Source of the DNA: Anthoceros angustus
Taxonomy: Eukaryota > Plantae > Anthocerotophyta
DNA: 64,000 bases
Direction of reading: 5' to 3'
Assembly: GCA_010909165.1 (NCBI GenBank)
Contig: MU008156.1
Coordinates: 868,001-932,000 of the forward strand
Shown here: positions 15,401 to 40,606 of the stretch, in pieces
How positions within the stretch are numbered: position 1 is the stretch's first letter
Layout: every line of letters begins with the position of its first letter
The notes under the pieces: model-generated
What the model was told of the DNA's origin: nothing
Databases searched by the model: none
Seen by the model: the letters and a program-made list of their open reading frames with translations, nothing else
Program-made: the position numbers and the translations under genes

Positions 15401-15781
15401 GATTCTCAAGTGCCTGTCAAGTTTACTCTTCCGCATAAGTATCACATTTATGAGTTTTATCTGCAAAGCTCAAGGGTCTTTTACAAATCTATCATCCATA
15501 TGATAAATAATCACTTAAGCTCTTCTCATTTATATATAGGTAAGTAGAATTACTTTTCCTTTCAAAAAAGAGCTTTAACTTAGCAACTACTAAAACCACT
15601 CTCTTAATGCATTTGATAGAGAAAGTAGATAGCATCGTTTAGACACTATTACTAAATACTATGACATACTATATGTATGGCATGCCACATGGCCTATCAA
15701 TGAGAACTATAGTTAGACTTTACTATTTTGTAATTTGTACATGCTTTACAAGTGGTTCACATCTTTCTTCAAGAGCACATA

Positions 15782-16099: not shown

Positions 16100-18188
16100 A
16101 CATTGAAAGTAAGATCCAAAAATTTGAAGATGATCGATAGAAGGCTTTTTATCAGTAAATGCTTCATAGGGAGTTATATCTTGAACAACATACGTAGACA
16201 ATCTATTAATGAGGCAAATGGCTATAAGAATAGCTTTTGCCCAATAAACCTTGGTAAGTGTGCTTGGGATAATAAACAGCTTGCGATCTCGTATAGGCAT
16301 AGATTCTTATTTTTCGCTACGCCATTTTGCTGAGGAGTGTGTACAACAGTGAGTTGTTGAGCTATGCCTTCAGCTCAACAAAACTCAGCTAATACATGTG
16401 ATGTAAACTCGCCACCATTGTCGGAACATAAAGTCTTGAGTTTTTTATATGTTAATCTCTCTACCCAAGTCATATAGTCCTTAAAGAAATGATGAGCATC
16501 ACTCTTGTATTTAACGATGTAGGTGAGGACGAAACAAGAGTAGTTGTCTATGAAATTCAAAAAGTATCTACTACCACGAAAAGAGGGTTTGGAGATAGGA
16601 CCACAAATGTCTATATGCACAAGCTCAAAGTGATATAGCCCTTTGTGGTGAGATGTTCTGAAAAGGAGCCTGATGTCTTTTGGTAATGACACAAACTTCA
16701 CACCAAGGTAGGTGTTCAATCTTGGAGAGAGAGAGAGTTTCATAGAGGTTTCCCTTCGACATTTGGAGTAATTTTTGACTATTTGGATGACCTAGACGAC
16801 AATGCCAAAGCATAGTAGGTGTTGGTGTAACAGAATCTTGGGACGCTACATTGATGGAATGTGTGGAACCCACTTGGACTGACAATTTGTAAAGTCCATC
16901 TTCTAATGTGCCTGTGCACATGGCATATGACTTATTGGTGACATAAATAATGAAGCAACTTCCTGCATGGAGTGTAATTTGCATAGTATGTTCTAGACAT
17001 AAGCTAGCGGTAGACACTAAGTTCTTATACGTGGATGGTACATGAAGGACGTTATTTAAAAGAAGAAGTTCACCTGAATCGCATCTAAGAACAACATGAC
17101 CGACTCTATCTATGGGGAGGTTGTGGTCATCACCCAAGAGAACAGACTCATGTCCTTTGGTTGGGAAATAAGTCTCAAAAGAGTTTTTGTTGTAAGAGTT
17201 GTGGGAGGTTGCTCCACTGTCTAAGTACCAACAGGGGTCAGAAGGCTCAAATGATGCCAAGTAGACAGTGAGAGCTAATGGTATTGTTGAAGACTATTTC
17301 TTTATAGCAACATGTGCTCCAGGTGGGGCCTCTTTCTTAGGCTCGCCATTCTTCTTTTTCCTACAGTCCTTCTCCATATAGTTTGGAATTCTGCACAAAT
17401 AATTCCATCCTTCTTGTTACCTCTTGTAGGTGTAGAAGAAGATGAAGTCTGCCCAATAAAAGTATATTGTATAAGATTGGTAGGTCGTGAAGAGGGTCTT
17501 CTATCGCAGCCTTGGCCTCAACCTCGACCTCTCCCTCTACCTCTTCTTGTGTACATTACTTGCTCTCTGATTATGGAATCTGGAAATGTGCCGACGACTT
17601 GACTCCTCCTGGATCAATGCTTCAATTAATTCATTGACACTAATGTCCATCATTTCGGAGTCATATTTGCGCATGTTTTTATGAGCATTCCTCAACACGG
17701 CATTCTATGTTGTCACAAATCTATAAGAGGGTGATAAGGAGGATAAGAGAGCAACAAAGCAATTTTACTCAAAAAAGCTTAGTGCTGAATGCAGCTTCAA
17801 GTTGAGATCTTTCCAAACGAAAAACACTAATGTGATGTTTGATTGTATTTGATTCCTACATCTTCAAATTATGGAAATCACGGGTAATTGTCATCAAACT
17901 CATAACATCCTTCGAGGAGTATAGCTGAGTAAGATGGTCTCACATTTCGTTGAAGGAGCTTGCTTCACCGATTTGCCTTACCATGTGTTGTGAGAGGCCA
18001 CTAATTAGGATATCTTGAGTCTTCTCGTCTTTGGCGTCTCAGGTACGTTTACTCTCAAGACCTCAGATGAGGCGTTCATTGGTTCTATTGACTATATCGC
18101 ATAATTCTCGGTTGCATACAACTCCTCTCATTAGTAGGTGCCAGACGTCATAGTCTTGGCCTTCGAATCTATCCTTGGGTGCAAGCAT
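16100..18188 (-). pseudogene. Copia gag-protease-integrase remnant (no RT/RNase H)
   Basis: MLAPKDRFEGQDYDVW, WYLDSGATSH, LWHCRLGH, ELVHIDICGP, LCSDNGGEF, TPYEAFTDKKPSIDHLQIFG, with many stops and frameshifts. Confidence 0.9.
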
Positions 18189-20683
18189 GGTTAGGTAAAC
18201 CACTTTATGTGGGGATGGACGCAACACGTATATATGCCCACATGTGGACATATTTACCTTCCAAAAATTCTTTCCAATAGAATGATTGTTGAAATGATTC
18301 AAAATTTTTTCCCATAACTAAGAGCAAGGCAACAAGTCCACACTAAAATGCTCATAGTTAAAGGATATGATTTGTACATAAGGTATTTAATTGTTTGATC
18401 ATGGATGGACAAGTGAACTTTGGACACGTGAACTTTGGACACAAAAAGTGAGCACAAGAGACACAACCCAAGTTCATTGGAATTTCAAACCATCCATCAG
18501 ATGAACATAGAATACGAAAAGTGAGTCTTTGTCACTCAAGTTTGAACTTGTTCAAATTTCAAAGTTGGAATAGCGAGAATTTCAAAGTTTGGCTTTAGCG
18601 GAATTTCAAAATTCATACAAGTGTACACTTATTTGTGACCATGCCTCACTTTTAGTGTTCTATGTCGATTAATGGATCGTTTGAATTTCAAATGTACAAG
18701 TTGACGGTCACAAACAAGTGTACACTTGTATGAATTTCAAATTTTTGTTTAGCGAATTTCAAACCAGTACCCAAGTTGCTATGGCATGTTTTTATGAGAG
18801 CATAACGCCATCTTCATGCTCATGAGCCCTTTCACCATCTTGCTTTGCGCTAAGGGCACTCGGTCCGTGTGTGAACAACACCATAATTTTGAAGGGGGGG
18901 AATATACAAACCCTTCGAGGGAAAAATAACACCTTGACGGAAAAGGCACCATCCTCAAATTGTGTGAAAGCAGTTGGTTTGAAAATACGTAGACACCCTC
19001 CGTTCATATAAATCTATAAGCGGATCTCCACGTACATCCATCGTTACCGGATGGGCCATGTGTCTCCACTTCATCGACCAAGTGAGCAACCATATGGACT
19101 TGAATGTCGAAAAACTTTGGCGGCATGATAATTTTGAAGGGGTTAATAATCTCAAGGGGTTTTCCGCAAATAATCTGAAGGGGTTTTGATGGGCCCTAAA
19201 GCAGTTTGAAGGCATTCGGAAAACACTCGAAAAAAGGGTGTCACCAGAAAATTACTACTTTCCATCCTAGCAATGTTTGTGGCCAATGGTGGTGAAACTC
19301 GAACCTAGGGAAATAATGCAAAGTAGGAGCGGTGAGGAAGGCCGTTCTGCCCGGGCAAACGTAAACTCGGTTTTGGGATGGAAATGTGGTTTTGTTATGA
19401 CACCACAAAAGCCACAGACGGTATTTCCTAACACGAAACATCGACCGGACTTACAACATTAACTCGGGACCCGGGAAAAACGAGATTTCGGTTTCACTCA
19501 TCCCGAGTTCAATCCATCGTCATCACTTGGTCCGACTTCTCCTCCATTGTCATCACTATCTTGATGACACTTTCACTCGAGTTGTATGAAGCCACGCTCA
19601 TGAGCTTATCCCTTATCGCTTTTTGTCCACTCTGAGATGTTTTATGTTCAAACCCATAATCTGGGATGGTATTTCATTCACAAATACCTCCTGTATGTTT
19701 TTAGGTAATGGATCTTATTCCCTTTTTCCTCGGCATTGGACGGATGGGTTACCACTGGCGGACTATGTGTTCTGCACATATCTCCTTCATACGCATCTAT
19801 GTGCTCGGTCCGATACTAGTGGATGAGGTCGTGGTGCGTTTACTCTCAAGACCTCGGATGAGGCGTTCATTGGTTCTATTGACTATATCGCATAATTCTC
19901 GGTTGCATACAACTCCTCTCATTAGTAGGTGCCAGACGTCATAGTCTTGGCCTTCGAATCTATCCTTGGGTGCAAGCATGGTTAGGTAAACCACTTTATG
20001 TGGGGATGGACGCAACACGTATATATGCCCACATGTGGACATATTTACCTTCCAAAAATTCTTTCCAATAGAATGATTGTTGAAATGATTCAAAATTTTT
20101 TCCCATAACTAAGAGCAAGGCAACAAGTCCACACTAAAATGCTCATAGTTAAAGGATATGATTTGTACATAAGGTATTTAATTGTTTGATCATGGATGGA
20201 CAAGTGAACTTTGGACACGTGAACTTTGGACACAAAAAGTGAGCACAAGAGACACAACCCAAGTTCATTGGAATTTCAAACCATCCATCAGATGAACATA
20301 GAATACGAAAAGTGAGTCTTTGTCACACTCAAGTTTGAACTTGTTCAAATTTCAAAGTTGGAATAAGCAGGAATTTCAAAGTTTGGCTTTAGCGGGAATT
20401 TCGAAATTCATACAAGTGTACACTTATTTGTGACCATGCCTCACTTTTAGTGTTCTATGTCAGTTGACGGGATCGTTTGAATTTCAAATGTACAAGTTGA
20501 CGGGTCACAAACAAGTGTACACTTGTATGAATTTCAAATTTTTGTTTAAGCAGGAATTTCAAACCCAGGTACCCAAGTTGCTATGGCATGTTTCTGATGA
20601 GAGCATAACCTGCCATCTTCATGCCTGCGAGCCCTTTCACCATCTTGCTTTGCGCTAAGGGCACTCAGTCCCCGTGTGTGAAC

Positions 20684-20760
20684 AACACCATAATTTTTGA
20701 AGGGGGGGAATATACAAACCCTTCGAGGGAAAAATAACACCTTCGACGGAAAAGGCACCA
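20684..20760. mobile_element. Orphan AACACC-type transposon terminus downstream of the Tnp2 transposase 3' end (noisy duplicate at ~18877)
   Basis: AACACCATAATTTTTGAAGGGGGGGAATATAC..CCCTTCG has the same layout as the right end of the 2.4-kb elements. Confidence 0.7.
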
Positions 20761-20829
20761 TCCTCAAATTGTGTGAAACAGTTGGTTTGAAAATACAGAC
20801 ACCCTCCGTTCATATAAATCTATAGCGGA

Positions 20830-20937
20830 TCTCCACGAAGTACATCCATCGTACACTGGATGGGCCATGTGTCTCCACTTCATCGACCAAGTGAGCAACC
20901 ATATGGACTTGAATGTCGAAAAACTTTGGCGGCATAA
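20830..20937 (-). pseudogene. CACTA Tnp2 transposase, C-terminal (DUF4218-like) piece
   Basis: MPPKFFDIQVHMVAHLVDEVETHGPSSVRWMYFVE joins in frame to 23355+ once the TIR element is removed. Confidence 0.85.
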
Positions 20938-23354
20938 AACACGATAATTTTTGAAGGGGGTTAATAATCTCGAAGGGGGTTTTCCGCAAATAATCTCTGA
21001 AGGGGGTTTTTGATGGGCCCTAAAACAGCGTTTTGAAGGCATTCCGGAAAACAGCTCCGAAAAAAAGGGTGTCACCCAGAAAAATTACTACTTTCCATCT
21101 AGCAATGTTTGTGGCCAATGGTGGTCGCAAACTCCAACCTAGGGAAATAATGCAAAGTAGGAACGGTGGAGAAGGCCGTTCCTGCCGGGCAAGAACGACT
21201 GTAAACTCAGTTTTGGGATGGAAATGTGGTTTTGTTATGACACCACAAAAGCCACGGACAGGTATTTCCTAACACGTAAACATCAAGAACCGGACTTACA
21301 ACATTAACTCGGGACCCGGAAAACGAGATTTCGCCACTCATCCCCGTAGTTCAATCCATCGTCATCACTTGGTCCAGCCTTCTCCTCCATTGTCATCACT
21401 ATCTTCAGCGACACTTTCACTTGTTGTATGAAGCCACGCAACTCGCAGAGCTTATCCCTTATCGCTTTTTGTCCACCGTGACATGACAGTGTATGCTCAA
21501 CACAAACCCATAATAGTGATGACTGCTTCATTCACAAATACCTCAGTATGTTTTTAGGTAATGGATCTTATTCCCTTTTTCCTCGATTGGACCGATGGGT
21601 TACCACTCTGGCGGACTATGTGTTCCCACATATCTCCTTCATACGCATCTATGTGCTCGGTCCGATACTAGTGGATAAGAAAGTGAGGTCGTGGTGCGTT
21701 TAGCTTCACGTCAATGACCTCCCAATCCGTAATGGCCTATGCATGTCCAGACAGCCGCGCCGTAAACATCCCTCTCGGATTTTATGTCCCCATTCATCCG
21801 TGCCATTTCCAGCTTGCCTTCCCGCATTTTGATATGCCCCAAATACATATCACGTGGAGGTCCTCAATAATGCCTCATCTAGCAAAGCTTCATCCGCACT
21901 TGAAGTGGCCGTATGATCCACTTCGCACGTGAAAACCACTTCCAAGGACGTGTAGCACTAGCCCAATGTTATTCTCCACAACGATAGCAATCTCCTTCCG
22001 GTCCACAGGCTTCCCACCACTTATACTCTTCAACATACCTATGGATGCAAATCTTTTAACCCTTCCCGCAAATGGGCCACACCTTCCATCGGTGATAGGA
22101 TACCGCTGCTCCTTCTTGTCCCCCTAGCTTCACCAGATGCACCGTAGGATGGTGCTAAGGGAGGCGCCGGCCGACGGCCTCCCCAAAGATGCCTCGCCAT
22201 GGGCGCCGGCCGCCGGGCGCCTCCCCTAGCACACCTGCCCATGGCGCCGGCCGCCGGCCGCCCCAACACGCCCGCTGGGCGGGCGCCGGCCGCCTCCCTA
22301 GCACCGCCCATGGGCGCCGGCCGCGCCTCCCTAGCACACCCCGCCCATGGGCGCGCCGGCCGCCCCTAGCACCCCATGGGCCGGCCGCCCCCAACACGCC
22401 CGGCCGGCCGCCGCCGGCGCCCCCACCAACACGCCATGTTTGCCCATGGCGCCGGCCGGCGCCTCCCCTACACCCTGCCACCCATGGGCGCCGGCTGGCG
22501 CCCTCCTAGGCTGTCTTCCAAAAAAATATTTAGCGCCTCAAGAGTATTCAACCATGGACTGTTGGTCTAGTGTTTGGGAAATAAGTGTAGTAATGAATAG
22601 GTTTCGTGTTCAAACCTCGTGCCTCCTCAAGAGTTCAATTTTGTTGATTTTAAGGATGCTTGCATGGGCGCATGGGCAACTAACTTTGTTCATTTTAAGG
22701 ACGTTGGCATTGCCTTAAAGCCCAAGTGGTTGCATTGAGTGCCGAAGGTTGAAGACCACGACCGCGACCTTTTGGATGAGGGTCGTGAGACCCTAGATCT
22801 TGTGTGGCGATCGACACCTGGACCGGGCCCAAGAATGATACTATTGAAGACGAGCAAGCAATGGAGGAGAACGACAACTTCGAGGCGGAGGATATGGACC
22901 GCCTCGAATATGGCGGTGGTACTTGACCTTTCGCGCAAGGCATGGATGAGTCGCCAGCCGCACTCTTGAATGGCTATTGTCGCCGATGACCACTTCCTCC
23001 TTCAGCTTGTTTGTTGCAATGTTCTCACGACCACTTAAATGAGACTCCGCTAATGCAGATTGTTTTCATTGTGTTCCACCACTTGAAAGTAAAAGTTTTC
23101 GGTTGTAATAAACATATGAAAATGGCAGCCCTCTATGCATTCTACTAAAGCATAACGGGCCCACACCCTATGTGCTCCAGTTCGGTGTAGACTTGAAAGT
23201 GCATCTTTTATCAAAGATATGACCTCGTAAAGGGTGTGTGCATTATCAAAGTAGGGCACATATGCTGTTCTAGGTAAGGTGTTCTTCGTGACAAGGGGGT
23301 GATGTCTCGGCCGAAGGGGGTCAGTATATCCCCCCCTTCAAAAATTATCGTGTT
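20938..23354. mobile_element. TIR DNA transposon copy 2 (2417 bp), inserted into the Tnp2 transposase
   Basis: Same TIRs as copy 1, 4-bp TSD ATAA (20934-20937 and 23355-23358), near-identical internal sequence. Confidence 0.9.
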
Positions 23355-25410
23355 ATAACCCTCTCTAACCGCACTAAGGTCTCTTGTGCATGTAGCCTCA
23401 TCGCAGGAATCTCCGATGGGTCAACCTCCCTTGTCCTAGCCATCGAAATAACCGTGCCAAGCCGACTATGGGCTAATAGACCTCCCGCGGTAAAGCTCCC
23501 CGCAATGCAATTGGGAGATAATACTCCATAACTTTTTTCCAGTCATGTGTTTTAAGGCCAGATAGTTTCCCGTCTGCAAACCTCTGTCCGATGTATGCGG
23601 CAAACCCAGATGGTGGCCTAATCAACTTCAGCTGCTCATGCACCATCGCCATGGCCTCCGGCTCCACAACATACATCGCATCAACATATGTAGCATCTGC
23701 GGCTGTGCTCGACGGCCAGAGGTCTGGTTTGGTGTTTACATCATAATCTGCCATGTCCCGCCGACAGGGGAGATCATCCTTAACACCAGATAAGAAACCA
23801 TAAAGTGAAACCACAATGTTCTTCAAAATGTGCATGCAATCTTTAAGATCACCCACTAATAGATGTTGCGGATTCAGTGATAGGGGATTAGAGCACATAT
23901 TGTAACCCAAAAACAAGGCTGAAGGAATAAATGAATGATAAAGCGAGAGGTCAGGGAAAGAATAGTACCCTTTTGTAAGGGAGGTAGTCGTAGGCAGCCC
24001 ATTTCTTCCACACATTCCACCGCCATTGCTCCATATGGTCTTGTGGCGTGGCAGACTCCCATGCATCCATCTCGTCTACAATCATGGCAGTCGTTATCCT
24101 CATTGGAGGCGCGACCGTCTCTACAACTCCGTTGAAAAGATGGATGTCTTGGACCCTAAGGTCATGGTCAAGAGGGAGCAACTTCCGGGTCCCTGGGTAA
24201 ACCACTTTGTGAAGATGAGGCGAGTGTCGGGCCTCGAGGTGCTTCCAACATGGGGGGCACGCCATATATCCTGAAGTATGGAGGCCACATAAAGTTCCCA
24301 TGCCCGGGTAGTCTGCCATCATGCAGAGTTGCGCGGCTCGCAGCCTAAAAATGCTCTTTGGATGGCCAATAGGGTACGAGGCATCTACGGCTTGTATGCC
24401 ATGCCATAACTCCCGCATGTCCTCGTACAACGGCGCCAGATATACATCAAGATTGCATGGCTTATGTGGCCCAGGCACCAACACAGCCGTCAATATGTAT
24501 TCCTTCCGTATGGTCTTCCAAGGGGCCAAATTATAGTTCAGAAGTAGAACTATGCTTCTGTCCGAAGGGATTAATGCCATCAGTGCTTAAGCCAAATCGG
24601 AGATTACAGTCTTCCTCCCCGAAACCATCAATCGCATCCGGTGTAGCCCATGCGGGCATATCTGCCATTAGTGCCATTTTACCGGTCTCACTTCGGAGTT
24701 GCCGATGGGCCACACGATCGCGGGCCAGCTGTGGAATAACGAACATATGTCGGCACCTCTTCAAAAGGGGGAAGTACCACATGACTTTGCTCGGAGTGCG
24801 TTCCTTCTTCACAGTGTCGGCCCGGTAACGAGGAAGGCCACATTTCAAGCAATTTTTCTCCCTCGAATATTGCCCTCTAAACAGCATGCACCCTTTAGGA
24901 CATACATGGATCCGCTCACATCCCATCGACACACATGAAATAATGCCCAAAGCTTCCGCTCGGCTCGCCGAAAGGCAATTCCCCTCTGGTAATATTGCCG
25001 TATGCAAAGCTTGGAAAAGGGCATCCATAGCAGCGTGGCTCACTCCGTACTTTGATTGTATTTCGAGGACAATCATAACGGCCGAGAGAACATCCACTTT
25101 GGTACCGGCGAACAAAGTTCGGCCGGCTGCCACCAGGAGCTTGCCCAAATCACCGGCACCATCCGCACCCACTCCATCAAAAAAACTAGAGTCCACTCGT
25201 TCGGCAATGTCATCTGCACTTCCTTGGATGTGCCATATTCATCCTCTCCTAGCGGGTCCATAATGTCTGCATCGGCGGCGCCACTATCCTCTTCCTGGTT
25301 ATCATTGCTTTGCATTTGCCCCCCCTCGAGCGTGGCAGGTTGGCCACGGGCCCGTATCCCGGACCCCAATGGGCGGCCGAATTGGTCGTAGTATCAAGCT
25401 TCTGGGCTAT
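23355..25410 (-). pseudogene. CACTA/En-Spm Tnp2-family (Transposase_21-like) transposase core, frameshifted
   Basis: RIHVCPKGCMLF..CLKCGLPRY, NLRFGLSTDGINPFG, NYNLAPW, VPGPHKPCNLDVYLAPL, ADYPG, DCMHILKN, LSGLKTHDW. Confidence 0.9.
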
Positions 25411-25469
25411 GCACTTCCACAGGGAGTTAAGAAATAAGTAGGGTTTGTTTTTAGGATTGAAGGATAAAT

Positions 25470-28400
25470 AAAGGCGGAAAGGAGGAATAAATTGGGGTGG
25501 CGCTTGGACGAGGCTCGGAGTATACTCGGACTGGAGTGAACAACGGACCCCGGTACCACTATGGCAAGCTCGGACTACGCCGAGTAACGGATAAGTCCGG
25601 AACCCACCCAGTGTCAAAACAGGATAAGTACGCCAGTGAAAGTAACCTAGGAGCGAGGCGTGAGGATGACGAGGCGGCGCCACGTGGACGGCCCCGAGTG
25701 GAGGTCGGCATGCAGAGGTCAGACCGTAACCTGCCGAGGCCGCAGGCAGTATTCACGCCCGCGCGCGCGCGAAGGCCGCAGGCCGGTAAGCGAGGGTCGA
25801 GTAAGCCGCGCACTCGCGCTACGGACAACGAAGAGGCGCCCAGCTTTCCACAAGCGCGCCAAGGAGGAGGTCACCGCAGCCTGCATAATCCTCACGGTCC
25901 CTTGCGCCCGCAATCCGCTCGGGCGCTTTTGGGCGCCTACCGGCAGAGCGCGCAAGCAACGCGCGAAGGAGGAACATCGTGCCGACCGCCAGCAGCCTAC
26001 AAGAACAAGAGGAGGAGGAAAGCAATGGCACCCAAAAGCCGACGGAAGTCTGGGAGCCATGGACCGTGGAGCGCAACATTGTGACCCGCGCTATCCGGAC
26101 TGGGCCCCGGCCGGAGGAAGCAGGGAATTGGTGCGGAGTGGCATCCGGACGTGTTCCAAATGGTCTCGACCTTTGACAACCTACTCTAGTCCGGAGTTTG
26201 CCCGAAGATGCCGGGCGATCAACAAGGAGGTCCGATCCAAGAACCTCCGGAGGACCCGAGGCGATGGACCTTGAGGTCCCGAGGATGGCCTACAACCGCC
26301 CAAGGAGGAAGAAGGGGCGGTGCCGAGCCCCTTAAGGCGAAGGGAAGATAGGGCCGCCACGGGCGCGCCGAGGCTCGAACGCAGGACAACCAACGGATGG
26401 TTGATATCCGATCCGCCGGATACCGAGTAAGGGCGGTAGCCGGATCATTGTCCATTGAACTCGCCACCAAGGTGGATCACCTTGGTGATAACCTGCTGGT
26501 ATTCTCGCATGCGCCCAGCTGGGAAGAGAGCGACCGGGAAGGATTATCTTCGCCCGCCTGGGCCAGAGGCACGCAAGCTAAGGAGCGAGAAGCCTCGCTT
26601 ATCGACCCCATACCGATTCATGTATGGGGACATTTCGAGCCCCTCAAGGAGGAGAGCTTGAACGGGCGCCAAGGGCCGGAGGCCCCGCCAAGTAGAGCGT
26701 GCAAGGGCGCCTGAGGTGGGGGTCGCCCTTCAAGACCAAGCGACTCGGAGGAGGACGATCGAGGATTCCTGACCCCATACGCTGAGCGAACCCCTCACCA
26801 CCTGTGGAAGTTTGGGAGGAGATTCCCCTTCCTCCTTTTGCCCTGCCGCCCGCATGAGGGAGCCGATGCCGAGGGCGCTGGCCCGCACCGGCATGCAGCC
26901 CAACAACCACGACGGCCGCCGAGCCCCGACGAACTCAACGGGAGCCAAGAGGCGGAAGACGGTGCCGCTTACCAACGCAAAGACCTCGGTGCCGGACTTA
27001 CCCACGGAGTGGCAAGAGGTCAAGAGGCGGTAAGGAGGGTAAAGGGACGTGGCCCAAGGAGCAGGAGGTCACCGCAGCACACCTCGAGCCGGCCCCTGCC
27101 CCGTGAAGGGGCAAAAGAGCTTGCTCCCGACCCCCTCACCTCCTCCGAGCCCTGTGAGAAAGAGGGCACAAAGGAGTTAGAGGCCAAGAGGGCCAAGAGG
27201 GTGAGACTGACCACCACTGTGACCCGAGGGTCCCGATTAGGTCCGAGAACCCACCGACTTACTCGGCGGTATGGAGGTCCTGGATCGAGAAATGCCGGCC
27301 CCACTACGGACTTTGTGGGGGCCTCACTGCGGCCGTGGAAGAAACACGGCGAAGTCCTGCTACGGCCATGGACGGAATGCTTTGGGGTCTCGTGGTACGG
27401 AGAAGACCTGTGAAGTGGAGGCCACCCGAGGAGGATGGTGGAACCCAAGAGCAAGTGAAGGCGGCCGAGGGGCAAAGGAAAAGGCGGAGTCCTCGCCGAT
27501 CGAGGAAGGGAAACGCCTGGCGGAGCGCGAGGCCCGCGGTTCAAGCAGACTGGGTTCTTCACCGCGAACACCTGGCAAGCTCGAGGCCAAGCGGGCGGAG
27601 GACCTTGCAGCGAAGAGGGAAGCGCAGCAGAGGCGGAAGAGGCCCGGCACAAGCAGAGAGCTCGGACCGGAGGCGGCCCCAGAGGCCAAGGGCGAGGCCT
27701 GTAAAGGCGGAAAGGAGGAATAAATTGGGGTGGCGCTTGGACGAGGCTCGGAGTATACTCCGACTGAGTGAACAACGGACCCCGGTACCACTATGGCAAG
27801 CTCGGACTACGCCGAATGGGATAAGTCCGGAACCCACTCCAGTCAAATAGGATAAATCGCCGAAAGTAACCTAGGAGGCGGGCGTGAGGATGACGAGGCG
27901 GCGCGCGTGGGCGGCCACAGAGTGGAGGTCGGGCATGCGGTAGGCGGGCCGTAACCTTGCGAGGCCGTTATAGCGGTATTCACGCCCGCGGCTGCGCGGC
28001 GTAAGGCGAGTGGAGCGTGGGGGTCGAGTAAGCCATGCGGACCCACAGCGATTCTGGACAGCGCCTTCAGCCCGGTTACTTCCTGGCGCGGCCAAGGAGG
28101 AGGTCATTTGCTGTGACCTCGAGACAATCCTCACGGTCCCTTGCGCTCCATAATCCGGCTCTCTGGCTATCTTTTGGGCGCCCGATCGGCTTAGCGCGTG
28201 GCGCACCGTCAAGGTTGGAGCGTGACAGCGGCGAAGGAGGAACATCGTGCCGGCGGACTCGGCCAGCGGCTACAACAAGAGGAGGAGAAAGCAATGGCAC
28301 CCAAAAGCCGGTGATGCAGGAGCCATGGACCCTCGTGGGCGCAACATTGTGACCGGCGCTATCCGGACTGGGCCCCGGCCGGAGGCGGGGATTGGTGCGA

Positions 28401-31400
28401 GTGGCATCTGGGCGTGTTCCAAATGGTGCGGACCTTTGGCGTCACTCTAGTCGGGAGTTTGCGGAAGATCTTGGCGATCAACAAGGAGGTCGATCCAAGA
28501 ACCTCCGGAGGACCAGGCGATGGACCTTGAGGTCCCGAGGATGGCCTACAACCGGAGGAAGAAGGGGCGTGGTGCAGGCCCCTTAAGGCGAAGGGAAGAT
28601 AGGGCGGCCACGGTGGCGATCTTGAGGCACAGGCAGCGGACAACCAGCGGATGGTTGATATCCGTCTGCTGGGCGGTCGAGTAAGGCGGTAGCCGGATCA
28701 TTATCCATTGGAACACACTCACCAAGGTGGATCACCTTGGTGATAACTGTTAGTATTCACATGCGCTCGGTGAGGAAGGGTGGGAAGGATTATCTTAGGT
28801 TGATCGAGGAGCCGCAAGCTAAGGGCGAAGCCCTCGCCATCGGTGACCCCATACGATTCATGTATGGGGACATTTCGAGCTCTGAAGGAGGAGAGCTTGA
28901 GCAGGCGCTCGGGAAGGTGGAGGCCACGAGTAGGCGTGCAAGGCGCGAGGTGGGGGTCGCCCTTCAAGACCAAGCGGACTCGGGAGGAGGGCGGAGGATT
29001 CGGACTCCATCGTCTGGGCGAACCCCTCACCACCCGGGGAAGTTTGGGAGGAGATTCCCCTTCCCTCCTTTTGGTGCCCTCGGGCGGTAGCACGGAGGCG
29101 TCTGGGAGGCGTTGGCGGCTCCGGCACCGGACAGCCAACAACCACGGCGGCTGCGGGCCCACGAACTCAGCGGGGCCGAGGCGGAAGGCGGTGCCGCCTG
29201 GCACCTCGGAAGGTGCGGTACCCTTACCCACCTTGCAGGTGGAAAGTGAGGCGGTGGGAGGCGAGAAGGGGCGTGGCCCAAGGAGGCGAGGAGGTCAGCG
29301 GCGGCCCACCAGGCAGTCTGTCCCCGGGAAGGGGCAAAAGAGCTTGCTCCGGACCCCCTCACCTCCTCAAGGCCCAGGAGAAAGAGGGCACAAAGGAGTT
29401 AGAGGCCAAGAGGGCCAAGAGGGTGAGACTCGGACCTCACCACTCGGGACTGAGGTCTGATTAGGTCAGGAGAACCCGTCCGGACTTACTCGGGGCGGTA
29501 TGGAGGTCCTTGGCGGAGAAATGCGGCTCCACTACGGACTTTGTGGGGGCCTCACAGTGGCCGTGGAAGAAACAGCGAGTCACAGCTCGTCATGGGCCGG
29601 AATGCTTTGGGGTCTCTGAGTGCAGTGAGAAGACCCGAGTGGAGGCCACCGGAGGAGGATGGTGGAACTCAAGAGCAAGTGAAGGCGGCCGAGGGGCAAA
29701 AGAGCTTGCTCCGGACCCCCTCACCTCCTCAGGCCCAGGAGAAAGAGGGCACAAAGGAGTTAGAGGCCAAGAGGGCCAAGAGGGTGAGACTCGGACCTCA
29801 CCACTCGGGACTGAGGTCTGATTAGGTCAGGAGAACCCAGTCGGACTTACTCGGCGGTATGGAGGTCCTTGGCGGATCGAGAAATGCGGCTCCACTACGG
29901 ACTTTGTGGGGGCCTCACAGTGGCGGCCGTGGAAGAAACACGGCGAGTCAGCTACCGTCATGGGCCGGAATGCTTTGGGGTCTCGTAGTGCAGTGAGAAG
30001 ACCCGAGTGGAGGCCACCGGAGGAGGATGGTGGAACTCAAGAGCAAGTGAAGGCGGCCGAGGCAAAGGAAAAGGCGGAGTCCCTCGCTCGGATCGAGGAA
30101 GGAAGCCGGGTGGCGGAGCCGAGGCCAGGCGGTTCGGGGCCGGGCCAAGGTTCTTGTGTCTGACAGTGAAACAAGCTCGAGGCCAAGCAGGCGGAGGACC
30201 TTGCAGCGAAGAGGGAAGCGCAGCAGAGGCGGAAGAGGCCGGCACAAGCAGAGAGCTCGGGACTGGCGGAGGCGGCCCCAGAGCAGGCCAAGTGGGCGAG
30301 GCCTGTAAAGGCGGCGGAGTCAAGTCACAAGAAGAGCGACCGGATCACCATGCACGTGATCGAACCGTGGAGAGAGTCACAGTACCGAGGTTAACTCAAG
30401 GCCGCACAAAGGGCTATGGAGTGCAAGGCGCGAGGTGGCCCAAGGAGGAGATGGAGGCCAAGACTCGGGAGATAGGATCTCCGACACCGAGGAAGTAGAG
30501 GAGAGGCGGCAGCAGATGGAGGACAAGAAGGACACGCTGGAGCTACAACCCAAGATGCGCTTGAGCAGTGATTCTCAACGAGAGAATCCACGACTCGAGC
30601 ACGAAATAGAGTGCCCAGCCCGGCTCAAGACGGAGGAAAATCGCGACTATCCAAGGAGTTGGACGCTGCTGCTGCATGAGCCGGAGGCGGAAGAGGCCGG
30701 GCACAAGCGAGAGCTCGGGACTGGCGGGCGGCCGGCTAAGCGGCGCCAAGTGGGCGAGCCAGTAAAGCGGCGAAGGAGTCGCCGCGGCAAGCGGCAGGAT
30801 CACTCTGACGTGATCGGGTGGAGAGAGTCGTATGACGAGAGGCTAACTCGAAGGCCGCCACAGGCTATGGGCGAGCAAGGGCCGGTAGGGGAGGAGATGG
30901 AGGCCGGCCTCGGGAGATAGGAGATCTCAGAGTGCAGTGCAGGAAGTAGAGGAGGCGGCGAGATGGAGGCAGCAAGGACAGCTGGGCTACAACTCCAAGA
31001 TCGTCGAGGCGGCGGTGATTCTCAGCGAGAATCACGACCTCGAGCACGAAATAGAGTGCCTCGGCTCCGTCGAAGGCGGAGGAAAATCGGCGACTATCGA
31101 GGTTGGGCGTTGCGAAGGAGGAGGAAGTCGGGAGTCGGACGGAGGTACGGCCACTTTGGAGAGGGTGAGCTAAGGCGAATGAGCGGAGGCCGGAGCAGCT
31201 GGGCGAGAAAGAAGGCTGCTGGTCCGGTGAGAAAGGCGGAAGGAGCAGCTGCGCTATGAGTGGTGGCAATGGAGAGAAGCAGCGGGGAGGCGGAGCAGCG
31301 GAGGAGGCGGCGAGATGGAGGCCGCCTTGTAGCCTCGCGTGATGACCAGCTCGGTGTCAAATCTGGCGGAGAGGTGGCCCAACAAGCGGCACGCCCGGCT

Positions 31401-32822
31401 CCGGAACACTTATGGCGGAGGAGTATCGGGTGCTCGGGCACCGTGGAAGAGGCAATTCAACAAGTCGATTCGGACTTTGCCTATTACCACGCCGAGCTCC
31501 CTGATGAAGCCTCTCGGCGGCGGAGGCCGGACCACAGTCGGACCGGAAGGCTCGAGAAGGAGATGAAGGCCACGGGGCAGCCAGGGACCCTAGTGGCCTG
31601 TTTGAAGATAGCGAGGCGGAGGCGGCGGAGGCGGAGCGGAGGAGGCGGCGGATGCGATCGAGGTAAGCACCCGCACCTCACCATGGAAGGAGGAGGGCCA
31701 GCGAGTCACTTGAGCGATCGGGAGCAGTGGAGGACTTGAGGAGAGCCACGGAGGTCCGTGAGGGAGGAAACCCGGGTGGGCGTGAGTCGGACTTTGTCCG
31801 GACCCGGAGGCCGGACCACAGTCGGACCTCGGTAATAAGTCCGGACCACAGTCGGACCAGTCCGGACCACGTGGGACCAAGTCCGGACCACGAGTCGGAG
31901 TGTCCGGACCACAGTCGGACCACAGTCGGACCTGGCCGGCGGACCCGAAATAAGCGGACTCACGAGTTGAGTCGAGACAGACCTCGAGGCCTGCGGCGAT
32001 GAGGAGGAGCCCCGCCGACTTACGCTAGGGCCAGAGTGGACCGGCGAAGGACCGAGGGGAGGAGGATGGCGTCGTGGTAGCGGTTGTCGACCGCCGTGTA
32101 ACTGATTCGGGAGAGGAGGGCCCGCCTCACGGATCATCCGATTGGGTGCACCACAAGCTGTCGGGGACGAAGTTGGACCACCCATTCGGCGGGGCCAGGA
32201 CCTTCCACAGTCGGCGAAGGAGATAGGGGAAAATAGGGTAGGCGGCCGATTAGGGTATATGCGGCTATCATTTCGAGAATAGGGGTGTAATAAAGGCGCC
32301 TTGGCGCGATATAAGAGTGCTCTAGTAAAGCATCTTTCTCTTGGTGTTGATCGCGTTCTTGCGGACCTTTGTGAGTCTTCTTGCTAACGTGAGTCTGAGT
32401 CAGCGAGCCGGACTCGGGAGATTGATCAAGGTCCGGTGGCGGACTTAGCGTTGTGGTGTGTGTGCGGGGAAGGGTGGCGGTGACGTGCTCGTCCGGGAGC
32501 CAGCGGTCACCGGCATTTGGGCGTGTGGCCGGAGGAACTCGGGAGGCGTGTAGAGCACAGGCGGAGGAGGCGGAGCAGCGGAGGAGGTCGGGCACGTCGT
32601 CTTTTCTAAGGCGAAGAGTGTAGCGTGAGGAGAGAGGAAAGGGCGGATCGTGAGGATGTATGTGAGCACGTCTGGGCCTTGAGCAGGTCCTTAGTACTCT
32701 GAACTGTCTGTGAAACGTTGTGAGTAGTTAGGAGTATGTGTGTGTTGAGGCGGAGCAGCTGGGGCCGGTAGGAATCAGCAGTGGCAGGCCTATCATTCCC
32801 TTGGAGCGGACTTCTTCCTACA
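25470..32822 (-). mobile_element. Gypsy/Tat-like LTR retrotransposon remnant (one LTR, PBS-like site, GC-rich internal region with degenerate antisense coiled-coil ORF pieces), inserted in the Tnp2 gene
   Basis: Minus-strand LTR TGTAGG...CCCCGACA (32159-32822) followed by TGGTGCACCCAATCGG. Tnp2 coding flanks both sides. No gag-pol motifs recognised. Internal noisy duplications. Confidence 0.55.
31790..31935. repeat. Short CCGGACCACAGTCGGA-type repeat cluster
   Basis: Multiple ggaccac/gtcgga units. Confidence 0.75.
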
Positions 32823-33030
32823 GCGACCGGATTATGCCTTGGTAGCCGAAAAGTCACGCCACAAGCTGTGCGCATTATAAATTCTAAATGGATCCGGTTC
32901 TCAGGGTGCAATCCCTTGGTGGAATTGCCTGAAACAGTGCTGCCATGCAACATCGCCAGGCAAAGGCTTCATCTTCTTACATTTGCGGCAGGGGCACCAT
33001 ACAATGCACTTTTCCATCGCGGACTCTTTC
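32823..33030 (-). pseudogene. Tnp2 transposase N-terminal 'transposase-associated' Zn domain (duplicated at ~34045-34240)
   Basis: MEKCIVWCPCRKCKKMKPLPGDVAWQHC fits the CPCxxC...V..H pattern of CACTA N-termini. Confidence 0.7.
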
Positions 33031-34599
33031 GGCAGAGCTTGTGCGTAAACCTTGTTGTCAGTTGGATGTTGACACCACCAGAGTTCACAACTAATTAGTC
33101 ACGCGGGTAGCGCGGTCATTCACCACGACTAATCGTGCACCACGTTTGTATCGTGTCGTAGTGGTAGATAGTTTCACGAGTCGACCCTCTGAGTCCGGCA
33201 GAATAATGATCTGGTAAATGGCAATAATGCGTATCGATTAGTTTCATTCGAGCATAATCCACATCCGAACATGGCGGCTCCCCCATCATTGCAACCCGAG
33301 CAAGGCAGCCATGAAAGAATGATCCACTATCAACTGGACCCAAGCCGAATACCAATGGCTGTGCCACAATCGGGGCGAGTTGGACCACCCATTCGGCGGG
33401 GCCAGGACCTTCCACAGTCGGCGAAGGAGATAGGGGAAAATAGGGTAGGCGGCCGATTAGGGTATACGGCGCTATCATTTCGAATAGGGGTGTAATAAAG
33501 GCGCCTTGGGCGCGATATAAGAGTGAGGCTCTAGTAAAGCATCTTTCTCTTGGTGTTGATCGCGTTCTTGCGGACCTTTGTGAGTCTTCTTGCTAACGTG
33601 AGTCTGAGTCAGCGGCGAGCACGCGCTCGGGAGATTGATCAAGGTCCGGTGGCGGACTTAGCGTTGTGGTGTGTGCGAGGTGGAAGGTGACCGTGCTCGT
33701 CCAGCGGTCAGGCAAGCAATTTGGGCAGTGTGGCCGGAGGAACTCGGGAGGCGTGTAGAGCCGGACGGAGGCCGGAGCAGCGGAGGAGGTCGGGGGGCGT
33801 AACCAGCGTCTTTTCTAAGGCGAAGAGTGTAGCGTGAGGAGAGAGGAAAGGGGATCGTGAGGATGTATGTGAGCGATCTGGACGAGCAGGTCCTTAAGCG
33901 TTTAGCCATCTGGGCTGTCACGGTGAAACGTTGTGAGTAGTTAGGAGTATGTGTGTGTTGAGGCGAGCAGGCGCTAAGGGCGGTAGGAATCACAAGCAGC
34001 GATGGCAGGCCTATCATTCCCTTGGAGCGGACTTCTTCCTACAACGGGATTATGCGCGCGGTGACCATCGGCAAAGTCACGCCTGGCATATTACGCATTA
34101 TAAATTCTAAATGGATCCGGTTCTCGGGGTGCAATCCCTTGGTGGAATTGCTCGAAGCAGTGCTGCCATGCAACATCGCCGAGCAAAGGCTTCATCTTCT
34201 TACATTTGGCGGGGCACCATACAATGCACTTTTCCATCGCGGACTCTTTCGGCAGAGCTTGTGCGTAAACCTTGTTGTCAGTTGGATGTTGACACCACCA
34301 GAGTTCACAACTAATTAGTCACGCCCGGGAGTGGCCGCAGTCATTCTGCACCCTGACTAATCGTGCACCCACGTTTGTATCGTGTCCGTAGTGGTAGATA
34401 GTTTCACGGTCGACCCTCTGAGTCCGACAGAATAATGATCCTGGTAAATGGCAATAATGCGTATCAGTTAGTTTCATTCGAGCATAATCCACATCTGAAC
34501 ATGGCAGAAGCACTCCCCCATCATTGCAACCCGAGCAAGGCAGCCATGAAAGAATGATCCTGGCTATCACTGGACCCAAGCCCGAATACCAATGGCTGT

Positions 34600-36136
34600 G
34601 CCACAATGTCCCGGGAGAGGATGCTCTATGAACCTATGACGGTGGCGACCCGAAAATGCGGGTGTCACTGGCCACTCCGCGAACGGTTGCTTCGCCTGAT
34701 ACGATCGATAGGCAAGCATGTTCTCGGACTTGCACGGGCAGTGCCTGCAGTCACCCTTACTTGCGCCATGAATTGGGAGAGGACGATCCGCCACACTGCA
34801 TAGCATCGCGAAGGAGGACTCAAGCCCGAGCAGTGGCGGCAAACCAGTGTGGCGCCTGGCGGGACACGAGAATGTCACGGGGACAGCAGTATGCAAGGCG
34901 GCTCGCTTATCTCCCAAGGGAGCTTATAGAGTAGACAGGGAAGCAGCCCGTGGTGTTGGAGCAGGGCATTTTCATGCCTTATTATCTACAATCGTCCATC
35001 ATTTCAGTACATGGGTTATGCGGGGTCAATGGCGCACATCATGCCAGGAGTGCTGTCCTATCTAACCGTGGTGTAAGCAACGCTAGTCATCTTCACCGGG
35101 CATCCGAACTGTGCATGGAAACTTTTTGGGGGAGCAAGCTTGGATCCCCAATTGCACTGAAGGCGGGGCCTTCAATCTGACTGTTGCGCCAGTTTGTGGT
35201 GAGAGTATGGCGTCTTTGATTGAGGGTAAACCACCCCGCGAAGCACTCGGCTTGTTGTGCAACGGCGAGAGTTCTTCCGGTGGGAGCTTGCGCGCAGGTC
35301 TGTTGGATGTATTCGAGAGGGAAGCCACGGAAGTGGAGGTTGCCGGTACGCACATCCACATTGCTATTCCACTTGGCTCCTCTCAGTGGTTATGGGTTCA
35401 CGCTCCGAGAACGGGCCTATAGGCTCGCGAGACGAGGTGCGCGCACCATCGGAGACTTGGGAGCCATCAATCGCTGTATCGGAGTCTGGCAGGGAAACAA
35501 AGACAGGATTGTGGGTTTGGGCGCGCAGTATGCAAACACAATCCCGTCCACACTGGCACGCACAGCTGTGGAGGCAGAGATGATGGTGGCCATATCCCTG
35601 AAGCTGAAGCTGGACCAACAGTTTGGGCGAAGACACTCGATGCCCTTGACGCAATTCCTGAAGGAGTTGAAGATGGAGGCAAACAGGCGGCTTGCTGGTC
35701 TCCGATTACAGTGTGGTCTTGAAACCCTCGGAAAGGATGACGCTAAAGCATGGGGATGACTGGTTGTGCAAGGAGACCCAAGCTCGGACATGGTGACGGC
35801 ATTAAGAGACTCGCGTTTGGCTGGCAAGCAGATTGGCTGATAGGCCGCCCGAGACAATTGACCTTAATCGGAAGTGGATTCTCAACGTGCTGGAGAGGAC
35901 CTACCTTCTGTGGAGAGAAATCTGACCGTGTGTGCGACTCACAAGACATGCTCAAAGTGCTTGTGCCCCCGGATTGTAAACCGGATGCTCAACAGCCAGA
36001 CTGTGGGCCGGGGATGGCTCGACACTGTTGCCTCTCGATTGTGTTAAGTGGCTATTCCGATTCAATTTCTCATTGTGTCCACTACCAGTTTTTGCCGCCC
36101 GACTATTGCCTCTATACCACTAGACTTGTGTACTAG
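34600..36136 (+). pseudogene. Degenerate unknown gene, divergent from Tnp2, apparently homologous to the gene inside the AACACG elements
   Basis: Chain of frameshifted ORFs 34847-35065, 35111-35422, 35220-35759 and 35750-36136, with collinear short motif matches (see findings). Confidence 0.5.
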
Positions 36137-36384
36137 CGGACAGTCGCGCGTACCCTAAGCGTTTGTCGCAGCAAACCTGGCTATCGTCCAATCCATCCAT
36201 TTGACATTACGCTTGGGCGCTAGAGTAGAGGTTGAGCGTGGGGCGTGTTTGCAGCATGCGTATGGTGCTTGTACCAGATAGGGCTGGCAATGCGGCAGCT
36301 TGATGCCAGTCGGTACTACGCGTTTGTTACAAAATAGTAAAGGACATACGCCCCAAGGGGAAGGGGAAATGGTTGACTACTTTG

Positions 36385-39300: not shown

Positions 39301-39918
39301 GCCATGAAGAAGCCGCGGTGTGTACAAGCATCTGATAAGTTGAAGGCAAGATAAACCTTCATGACTATTGTGCTAATTGAGGATGTGAGGTTCTCTTTGA
39401 AGCTATCTCCATAACTATGGACCATTGTTGGCTTTGATTCTTGCGAGTCCTTCTCTTTCTCCTTGCCTTTATTCTTGTTTTGGTTAATCTTGTCATCAAG
39501 ATTTTCTTCGTTGTCATCCTGTCCAACCATCGCACGTGAATTTAGAAGGCATCGCTAGATCGTGCGCATGCATGTATGGAGAAGTTGATATATTCTGAAT
39601 TTCCTACATCTTCATCAGAATTAGAATCTGCAGACTGGGGGGAGTTTTTGTTATGAGGAGTTTTTTTTTTAGGGAGACTTGAGACTGTAAGATTTAATTT
39701 ATCAATAACATTGCTAAGATAGCAAATTTATCTAGTTATCTAGTGAAAAAAATTCTCATTATGTTACAGCGTGTCATAATTCCCGATTTTGAACGCACAG
39801 GTTGAAATGCATGCGGCATTGCATTGCACCACTCGCGACAATACCAAAGCTATACCATTCTTTGTGGATTAGGGTTAGTCATTACCATGGCTCGTGCCTT
39901 AGGCAAGGACGACTTTGT
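36385..39918. repeat. ~1.77-kb tandem duplication of unidentified, probably TE-derived sequence
   Basis: 36385-38158 matches 38159-39918, differing mainly by small indels. Confidence 0.8.
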
Positions 39919-39950
39919 GGCTGGAGGGAGCCATGAGAGGAGCGATTGCG

Positions 39951-40458: not shown

Positions 40459-40606
40459 GAAGTTTGATAACGCTTGGGATACAATGTGGCTATGCTCTTT
40501 CCACTTCCTATGGTTTATTTTTCTTCATCTTCATCATCATGTCTTCCATGCGCCGGTGTTGGGAGTGGCGCAATAGCAGGGTCTAGGAGGTCGTGACGGC
40601 GAGGCC

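What the first reader, a model, noticed from the sequence alone, without database searches (positions are those of the whole stretch)
20684..36136. Reconstructed putative autonomous partner: Tnp2 transposase linked to an AACAC terminus
Seen: removing the 2.4-kb element (20938-23354) and the Gypsy-like block (25470-32822) leaves one minus-strand Tnp2 gene in correct domain order: CPCRKC domain at ~32830-33030, TDG/DYPG core at 23355-25410, then LVRLERV|MPPKFFDIQVH...WMYFVE at 20830-20937. About 150 bp beyond it lies AACACCATAATTTTTGAAGGGGGGG, homologous to the right end of the small elements. Inference: a Tnp2-family enzyme mobilises the AACAC/4-bp-TSD elements, and a non-autonomous member inserted into a related transposase gene. 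Caveats: the transposase is truncated after FVE, and the opposite terminus (predicted ...ATSGTGTT followed by GAAC) is not visible in the window.
Basis: partly seen in the sequence, partly recalled or inferred. Interest (0 to 1): 0.8.

Follow-up and report, generated by a model that had tools for sequence, protein, structure and literature searches.

The report
Dead CACTA transposase beside AACAC end
This stretch is a pile of dead jumping genes in a non-flowering land plant: a broken CACTA-type transposase gene was split by a small "AACAC" element and now abuts the end of another, but that one junction does not show that this enzyme moves the AACAC elements.

Summary
The sequence observation mostly holds. 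A minus-strand Tnp2 (CACTA/EnSpm-type) transposase pseudogene lies at 23357-25390. Its DUF4218 tail lies at 20813-20935. A 2,417-bp non-coding element (20938-23354) separates the two; it has perfect 23-bp AACAC inverted repeats and a 4-bp ATAA target duplication. Removing it plus one ATAA restores one open frame. The gene stops after WMYFVE, where it meets about 145 bp of a diverged AACAC right-type end (20684-20830).

Three points do not hold or are weak:
- The "Gypsy-like" block has no retroelement domain in 76 open stretches.
- The CPCRKC N-terminal exon is only weakly supported.

The inference that Tnp2 mobilises the AACAC elements rests on a single junction. No second terminus lies in the window. 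The transposase groups with ordinary plant CACTA enzymes, nearest to liverwort ones. The review read here describes plant CACTA elements as having CACTA/CACTG ends and 3-bp duplications, and Sola as the plant superfamily with 4-bp duplications. I give the Tnp2-AACAC link about 0.25. The likelier reading (about 0.55) is nested, rearranged, unrelated transposons. Other scan notes record AACAC elements on other DNA of this genome.

The parts
20684..20706 (+). AACAC-type terminal repeat (AACACCATAATTTTTGAAGGGGG), outer flank GAAC at 20680-20683; element interior lies to the right
   Evidence: 22 of 23 identical to the small elements' repeat
20707..20830 (+). Diverged right-type subterminal region retained next to the terminus; the last codons and stop of the truncated ORF (IRYRFI*) are read from it
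   Evidence: Similar to the right but not the left subterminal region of the small elements: z about 5, 0 of 500 shuffles
20813..20935 (-). Tail piece of the Tnp2 gene (MPPKFFDIQVH...WMYFVE); Tnp2-derived part ends at about 20831
   Evidence: Pfam DUF4218 positions 30-64 of 114, E 3e-9; colinear tblastn; coordinates
20934..20937 (.). Left copy of the 4-bp target site duplication ATAA (right copy at 23355-23358)
20938..23354 (+). 2,417-bp non-autonomous AACAC element with perfect 23-nt inverted ends, inserted into the DUF4218 coding region
   Evidence: no Pfam domain in its open stretches; excision restores the frame
23357..25390 (-). Core of the Tnp2 (CACTA/EnSpm-type) transposase pseudogene. 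Frameshifts near 24550 and 23440, in-frame stop at 23473-23475, possible short intron about 23869-23974, L in place of the conserved E in DCMHILKN (23809-23841)
   Evidence: Pfam Transposase_21; six-frame reading; homologue alignments; motif count; coordinates
25391..32885 (.). About 7.5 kb of GC-rich, purine-skewed direct repeats (~2.2-kb units) between the core and the candidate first exon. Either an insertion of unknown type or a repeat-swollen first intron; not shown to be Gypsy
32886..33098 (-). Candidate N-terminal zinc-finger (CPCRKC, Transpos_assoc-like) exon; weak
   Evidence: No Pfam hit; best window peptide against a custom profile, E 0.002; six homologue N-termini align here
33370..34607 (.). 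Tandem copy (88%, indel-rich) of 32161-33370, including a second copy of the CPC piece at 34094-34318
18042..19824 (.). Tandem copy (92%, indel-rich) of 19833-21676. Holds a second terminus (18877-18899), a second DUF4218 tail (about 19028-19123) and the first ~700 bp of the small element, lacking its AACAC
10553..13014 (+). Second complete small AACAC element (2,462 bp, TSD GGAG), 90% identical to 20938-23354

Best explanation
The region is a nest of dead transposons.

SHOWN. A plant CACTA/EnSpm-type transposase gene (Tnp2: Transposase_21 plus DUF4218) lies on the minus strand and is a pseudogene. It has at least two frameshifts and one in-frame stop, and it has L where homologues keep the E of the D.MHxEKN motif. 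From memory of Yuan and Wessler 2011, that E is the catalytic one. A 2.4-kb non-coding AACAC element transposed into its DUF4218 coding region, duplicating ATAA. The gene is cut off after WMYFVE and joined to the inner side of about 145 bp of a diverged AACAC right-type end. Later tandem duplications copied parts of the locus.

INFERRED. The junction at about 20830 is a deletion or rearrangement breakpoint between two unrelated elements. One is a CACTA remnant that has lost its own ends. The other is a second AACAC-family element that landed in or beside it. The AACAC family is probably moved in trans by a different enzyme. By its non-specific 4-bp target duplications, the Sola superfamily is the obvious candidate. 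Sola is known from mosses, and other scan notes say Sola1-like elements are abundant in this genome.
For: Anatomy: gene, breaks, restored frame; inverted ends, 4-bp duplications GGAG and ATAA; terminus and right-type subterminal homology.

One AACAC insertion into this very gene is proven, so AACAC elements do target this locus. The region is heavily rearranged: three tandem duplications, and a nearby copia fragment at 16282-17260. No partner terminus lies anywhere in 64 kb.

The transposase sits inside the plant CACTA family, sister (aLRT 93) to two Riccia liverwort proteins. All named relatives are land-plant Tnp2 proteins.

Literature: plant CACTA elements start with CACTA or CACTG and make 3-bp TSDs. 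Sola elements make 4-bp TSDs, have very variable ends, and occur in the moss Physcomitrella (PMC10741241).

Scan notes, not checked by me, report many 9-24-kb 'Sola1-like' transposons in this genome.
Against: The terminus faces the gene with its inner side, at about 145 bp. That is just what an internal-deletion derivative of an autonomous element looks like. The retained end is a diverged subfamily (repeat 22 of 23, subterminal part only about 60% alike), as expected for a distant autonomous partner rather than another copy of the 2.4-kb element. No CACTA-type inverted-repeat pair surrounds the gene. AACAC contains the CAC...GTG hallmark of the CMC group, offset by two bases. CMC and related lineages make 2-5-bp TSDs, and Chapaev makes 3-4 bp (PMC12730594, PMC4079192). 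The TSDs seen here (GGAG, ATAA, flank GAAC) do not fit the AWWT preference reported for Sola1 (PMC3845634). No Sola-type transposase was seen in the window, although Pfam has no Sola model, so it could not have been seen.
Confidence: 0.55

Rival explanations
1. 20684 onward is a large AACAC-bounded element whose own transposase is this Tnp2 gene. An internal deletion removed everything between the middle of DUF4218 and about 145 bp from the right-type end, and the left-type end was lost or lies outside the window. The 2.4-kb elements are its non-autonomous derivatives. This would be a plant EnSpm lineage with AACAC ends and 4-bp TSDs.
For: Inner side of the terminus faces the gene's 3' end, about 145 bp retained. 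The repeat is conserved while the subterminal region is diverged, as between autonomous and non-autonomous partners. No CACTA ends lie near the gene. The transposase core sits on a very long branch (1.95 against a median of 0.41) and is at most 42% identical to anything among 1.84 billion representatives. TSD length varies from 2 to 5 bp across CMC-like lineages, and CAC...GTG lies within AACAC...GTGTT. The small element's left end has three direct GAAGGGG motifs, recalling CACTA subterminal repeats.
Against: It is a single junction in a rearranged, indel-rich region. There is no second terminus in 43 kb to the right. The small elements share nothing with the gene or with the region upstream of it. 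The long branch is expected for a decayed pseudogene in a noisy assembly. The protein is otherwise a normal plant CACTA transposase, and the review read here gives CACTA/CACTG ends and 3-bp TSDs for that group. No other note on this genome contains the word Tnp2.
Confidence: 0.25
2. An AACAC-family element carries the Tnp2 fragment as captured or nested cargo. Either a CACTA copy inserted into a large AACAC element, or a fragment was picked up. The gene then lies inside AACAC ends without being their enzyme.
For: The Tnp2 sequence lies on the inner side of the terminus. Nesting is the rule in this window.
Against: No CACTA ends or 3-bp TSD mark a nested insertion, and no left-type AACAC end lies to the right. 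From the window alone this cannot be told apart from the best explanation.
Confidence: 0.1
3. The adjacency is an assembly artefact. The terminus-gene junction and the tandem copies come from mis-joined or uncorrected long reads.
For: Repeat copies in 10-40 kb differ mainly by short indels. Gap openings against mismatches are 72:41, 63:51, 46:40 and 121:75, compared with 14:124 for an older repeat pair elsewhere in the window. Many differences sit in homopolymer runs.
Against: The junction occurs twice (18877-19123 and 20684-20937) in the same arrangement. The small element's ends and TSD are exact, and its excision restores the frame. Errors of this kind produce frameshifts, not new junctions.
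Confidence: 0.07

Closest known systems
En/Spm (CACTA) TnpD-type 'Tnp2' transposases of land plants (Pfam Transposase_21 + DUF4218)
   Same: Same domains in the same order. 30-46% identity, colinear, to full-length proteins of Erythranthe, Papaver, Riccia and others. Has the STDG and DYPG motifs and the C(2)C motif.
   Different: Truncated in DUF4218, with no DUF4216 or C-terminal third. Frameshifts, a stop, and L at the conserved E position. No CACTA/CACTG ends or 3-bp TSD at the locus; the only terminus nearby is AACAC.
Sola superfamily (DDD transposase, 4-bp TSD; known from the moss Physcomitrella)
   Same: The AACAC elements make 4-bp TSDs and have short inverted ends. Sola ends are described as very variable, sizes as 2-9 kb and up to more than 15 kb, and the superfamily occurs in non-flowering plants (PMC10741241).
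   Different: No Sola-type transposase was seen, and Pfam could not detect one. The TSDs GGAG, ATAA and GAAC do not fit the AWWT preference reported for Sola1 (PMC3845634).
Chapaev and other CMC/CMCT lineages
   Same: Chapaev is described with 3-4-bp TSDs and invariable CAC...GTG ends, and CMCT lineages with 2-5-bp TSDs (PMC4079192, PMC12730594). AACAC...GTGTT contains CAC...GTG.
   Different: The CAC is offset by two A's. The transposase here is of the plant EnSpm type, and I had no Chapaev reference sequences to compare.
Lanisha (proposed EnSpm-like superfamily from the moss Ceratodon purpureus)
   Same: A bryophyte cut-and-paste lineage with weak similarity to EnSpm transposases (PMC8245031, PMC12730594).
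   Different: Its ends, TSD and protein were not available to me. The gene here is a clear Transposase_21 member rather than a weak relative.

Membership tests
Plant EnSpm/CACTA transposase (the gene) | Transposase_21 (Tnp2) catalytic domain | tested here: met
   E 1.7e-35, profile positions 54-210 of 213, plus positions 3-50 in the upstream ORF
Plant EnSpm/CACTA transposase (the gene) | DUF4218 following the catalytic domain | tested here: met
   Positions 30-64 of 114, E 3e-9, in 20813-20935; the rest of the domain is missing
Plant EnSpm/CACTA transposase (the gene) | N-terminal Transpos_assoc (CPCxxC) domain | tested here: inconclusive
   No Pfam hit at E 10; custom profile E 0.002, best in the window; weak tblastn matches from six homologues
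Plant EnSpm/CACTA transposase (the gene) | Intact DDE triad | tested here: not met
   The D motifs STDG and DYPG are present. The position that is E in 49 of 54 homologues (D.MHxEKN) is L. That this E is the catalytic one is from memory, not tested.
CACTA element (the locus) | CACTA/CACTG...TAGTG/CAGTG termini | tested here: not met
   No such inverted-repeat pair surrounds the gene
CACTA element (the locus) | 3-bp TSD | not testable with these tools
   No element ends could be identified for the Tnp2 remnant
CACTA superfamily (the AACAC elements) | CACTA/CACTG ends and 3-bp TSD | tested here: not met
   Ends are AACAC(G/C)ATAA; TSDs are 4 bp (GGAG, ATAA)
CACTA superfamily (the AACAC elements) | Autonomous copies encode a Tnp2 transposase | tested here: inconclusive
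   One terminus-gene junction only; no complete large copy in the window
Sola superfamily (the AACAC elements) | 4-bp TSD | tested here: met
   GGAG and ATAA; excision plus one TSD copy restores the frame
Sola superfamily (the AACAC elements) | DDD Sola-type transposase in autonomous copies | not testable with these tools
   No autonomous copy in the window. Pfam has no Sola model (PMC5751038), so the blank Pfam scans say nothing.
Sola1 subgroup (the AACAC elements) | AWWT target preference | tested here: not met
   GGAG, ATAA and flank GAAC against AWWT/AWDT (PMC3845634); only three sites
Gypsy LTR retrotransposon (block 25470-32822) | gag, protease, RT, RNase H or integrase domains | tested here: not met
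   No Pfam family in 10 ORFs or in 76 open stretches; no YxDD or zinc-knuckle motif
Gypsy LTR retrotransposon (block 25470-32822) | Pair of LTRs with a 5-bp TSD | tested here: inconclusive
   Two ~2-kb direct repeats, 80% alike, lie almost head to tail (25469-27476 and 27702-29700), with further partial units; no TSD could be defined

The most novel reading that the evidence does not exclude
A deep-branching land-plant lineage of Tnp2 (EnSpm/CACTA-type) transposases has switched from CACTA ends and 3-bp TSDs to AACAC(C/G)ATAA ends and non-specific 4-bp TSDs. It mobilises the 2.2-2.7-kb AACAC elements scattered through this genome. The locus would then be an internally deleted autonomous copy hit by one of its own derivatives.
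Probability: 0.25. Interest if true: 0.55.

Novelty: new member of a known kind. Interest (0 to 1): 0.25.

Why it matters
If the link were real, it would show that target-duplication length and the name-giving CACTA ends are not fixed within the plant EnSpm clade. It would also assign an enzyme to an unclassified, apparently common family of this genome, which would help transposon classification and annotation in non-flowering plants. As it stands, the locus is an ordinary nested transposon graveyard. Its practical value is a clean, frame-restoring example that fixes the AACAC family's ends and its 4-bp TSD. It also gives a precise, cheap genome-wide test of which transposase that family uses.

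Tried and rejected
(1) Word-index protein searches with the 209-aa core and with a RING ORF found nothing. The full search gave only relatives of 42% identity or less.

(2) I looked for ends around the nearest relatives: two Riccia loci with 10-kb flanks, and 8.7-kb and 7.3-kb metagenome contigs. I found no convincing inverted-repeat and TSD pairs, and the AACAC-like octamers there are chance matches.

(3) An exact scan of metagenome contigs for the 23-nt terminus gave 0 hits.

(4) I tested the 'second gene shared by large and small elements' at 34600-36136. There is no DNA or translated similarity to the small elements, no Pfam domain, and no usable Atlas hit with low recognition for ORF 35220-35756.

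(5) A SET-domain exon, reported in this genome's other CACTA copies, has no motif in the window.

(6) A weak zinc-finger-like hit inside the small element (22613-22714) is on the wrong strand for a Tnp2 remnant and was rejected as chance.

(7) A tblastn hit at 16282-16464 comes from a chimeric database protein's copia integrase part, not from Tnp2.

(8) The paralogous segment at 41238-41520 does not cover the insertion point of the small element at 10553, so it is not an empty site.

(9) Rfam gave no match in the window.

(10) The Bao et al. 2009 Sola paper and the Lanisha description could not be read.

(11) Scan-note look-ups by sequence were blank, which means nothing.
Full report
WHAT IS THERE

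The window is nuclear DNA of a land plant outside the flowering plants. It holds an NPF/PTR2 transporter exon, a papain-like protease, RING-H2 genes and copia fragments. The NPF exon is closest, at 60%, to a hornwort transcript (Nothoceros), and 50% or less to Ginkgo, lycophyte, moss and fern proteins. Other notes of this scan call the genome liverwort-type. The species' own proteins are not in the collections searched.

THE GENE

ORFs on the minus strand between 23473 and 25196 carry Pfam Transposase_21 (Tnp2). ORF 23951-24580 matches at E 1.7e-35, and the start of the domain lies in ORF 24531-25196. A full HMMER search of 1.84 billion representatives gave 1,770 relatives but none above 42% identity. 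All that carry names are land-plant proteins: Riccia, Asparagus, Erythranthe, Oryza, Papaver and others.

tblastn of these proteins against the window is colinear in four blocks. For P0052 (1,077 aa):
- aa 135-341 map to 25163-24546
- aa 347-537 map to 24550-23975
- aa 548-701 map to 23841-23419
- aa 716-759 map to 20956-20822

The last block is the 41-aa piece 20813-20935, which on its own matches Pfam DUF4218 positions 30-64 of 114 (E 3e-9). About 320 C-terminal residues, including DUF4216, have no counterpart anywhere in the window.

The gene is dead:
- The frame changes near 24550 and near 23440.
- There is an in-frame stop at 23473-23475.
- The motif D.MHxEKN reads DCMHILKN; homologues have E there in 49 of 54 cases. 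That this E is the catalytic one is from my memory of Yuan and Wessler 2011.
- A ~100-nt gap with a frame change at about 23869-23974 may be an intron.

Some frameshifts could be consensus errors (see the duplications below). The stop, the truncation and the insertion are not.

THE INSERTION

20938-23354 has perfect 23-nt inverted ends, AACACGATAATTTTTGAAGGGGG, and ATAA on both sides. A 90% identical copy at 10553-13014 has GGAG on both sides. The pattern does not occur in 100 shuffles. Neither copy has any Pfam domain in its 75 open stretches.

In a script I removed the element and one ATAA. The minus strand then reads one open frame...LVRLERVMPPKFFDIQVH...WMYFVE. This proves both the insertion and the 4-bp duplication. 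The pieces were searched apart, by reference.

THE TERMINUS

At 20684 lies AACACCATAATTTTTGAAGGGGG, 22 of 23 identical to the small elements' ends, preceded by GAAC. The following ~120 nt are significantly similar to the right subterminal region of the small elements (z about 5; 0 of 500 shuffles reach the score). They are not similar to the left one (z -0.8). The similarity is only about 60%, so this end belongs to a diverged subfamily.

The similarity runs to about 20830, so the Tnp2-derived sequence stops right after WMYFVE, and the last codons and the stop are read from subterminal DNA. The inner side of the terminus faces the gene. No partner end, in either orientation and allowing five errors, occurs anywhere else in the window.

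1. Three tandem duplications:
- 18042-19824 is a 92% copy of 19833-21676. It repeats flank, terminus, DUF4218 tail and the first ~700 bp of the small element.
- 32161-33370 and 33370-34607 are 88% alike.
- 36375-38160 and 38148-39920 are 94% alike.

Their copies differ mostly by short indels, with 72 gap openings against 41 mismatches in the first pair. An older repeat pair elsewhere in the window shows 14 against 124. This suggests an indel-prone assembly in this region, or unusual decay.

2. The block 25470-32822 is not shown to be Gypsy. There is no Pfam family in 10 ORFs or in 76 open stretches of 60 aa or more on both strands, and no RT or zinc-knuckle motif. It consists of GC-rich, purine-skewed ~2.2-kb direct repeats. 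It may be an unclassified insertion or a swollen first intron. Other notes say that CACTA genes of this genome have a long first intron, but no SET motif is present here.

3. The CPCRKC piece (32904-33098) has no Pfam hit. Against a profile I built from the N-termini of 41 homologues, it is the best of 1,617 window peptides, at E 0.002 over 32 residues. Six homologue N-termini align there on the right strand. I take it as a probable first exon, at about 0.6.

4. 33100-40000 holds no recognisable domain apart from nothing at all beyond the duplicated tail, and it shares nothing with the small elements. The end coordinate 36136 marks nothing I could identify.

PLACEMENT

A quick maximum-likelihood tree of the catalytic core (144 rows) puts the window sequence on a very long branch (1.95, against a median of 0.41). 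It is sister (aLRT 93) to a small group with both Riccia proteins, and outside a well-supported group (97) that holds all named angiosperm proteins. The careful tree search did not finish, so this is the quick tree. The protein is therefore an ordinary, if decayed, member of the plant EnSpm/CACTA family with bryophyte affinity.

DOES THIS ENZYME MOVE THE AACAC ELEMENTS?

For:
- The junction has the look of an internal-deletion derivative.
- The retained end is a diverged relative, as autonomous partners often are.
- No CACTA ends surround the gene.
- CAC...GTG lies within AACAC...GTGTT.
- CMC-type lineages make 2-5-bp TSDs, and Chapaev makes 3-4 bp (PMC12730594, PMC4079192).

Against:
- It is one junction in a rearranged region.
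- The second end is missing.
- One AACAC insertion into this gene is proven, so a second insertion followed by a deletion is an equally short path.
- The review read here describes plant CACTA elements as having CACTA/CACTG ends and 3-bp TSDs, and Sola as making 4-bp TSDs with very variable ends; Sola occurs in moss. Ginger, the other plant superfamily with 4-6-bp TSDs, has TG...CA ends (PMC10741241).
- Scan notes report many 9-24-kb 'Sola1-like' elements in this genome, and AACAC-bounded elements of 9.1 and 10.8 kb whose cargo I could not see. No other note contains the word Tnp2. These are unchecked leads.

Sola1's reported AWWT target preference is not met by GGAG, ATAA and GAAC, so membership in Sola1 is doubtful too.

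The rest goes to cargo or nesting inside a large AACAC element, and to assembly error.

ATTEMPTS TO SETTLE IT WITH OUTSIDE DATA FAILED

The nearest relatives' loci show no clear ends. The terminus is absent from metagenome contigs.

VERDICT

The mechanistic inference is possible but unproven, and on present evidence it is the less likely reading. The decisive test is a simple genome-wide census of the ends of this Tnp2 lineage and of the cargo of long AACAC elements.

Noticed in passing
window 18042-19824 / 19833-21676; 32161-33370 / 33370-34607; 36375-38160 / 38148-39920: Three tandem duplications of 1.2-1.8 kb whose copies differ mainly by short indels, often in homopolymer runs. Either a locally noisy long-read consensus or unusual decay. 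Frameshifts in this region should not be trusted without the reads.
   Followed up: partly
window 20270-20563 (copy at 18479-18763): Six same-strand copies of GGAATTTCAAA at irregular spacing, plus hairpin-forming inverted repeats, just outside the AACAC terminus. There are 13 matches in the window against 1.8 expected. It looks like the subterminal region of yet another transposon, but no ends were found.
   Followed up: partly
window 34600-36136: The stretch another note calls a 'second gene shared by large and small AACAC elements' has no DNA or translated similarity to the small elements, no Pfam domain, and a low-recognition Atlas result for its longest ORF.
   Followed up: yes
window 13706-15757 versus 41516-45655: A roughly 2-kb segment carrying a RING-H2 gene (ORFs 14057-14983 and 41872-42816) is present three times, once as a large palindrome (41.6-43.5 kb against 43.9-45.7 kb), at 84-90% identity. 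Here the differences are mostly substitutions.
   Followed up: no
window 3573-4256 and 16282-17260: Copia fragments: gag (Retrotran_gag_2), and the Pol beta-barrel, pre-integrase and integrase parts.
   Followed up: partly
window 5138-5274 and 13517-13654: Two 93% identical ~138-bp repeats, noted elsewhere as a 5S-derived SINE. Rfam found no family at gathering score anywhere in the window.
   Followed up: partly
window 48037-48540; 39824-40585; 13017-13499: Tandem arrays with periods of 18 bp, 127 bp and 67 bp.
   Followed up: no
P0138 (database protein): One of the Tnp2 relatives is a chimeric gene model that joins Transposase_21 to copia integrase and RT parts. It produces false Tnp2 hits on copia DNA.
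   Followed up: yes
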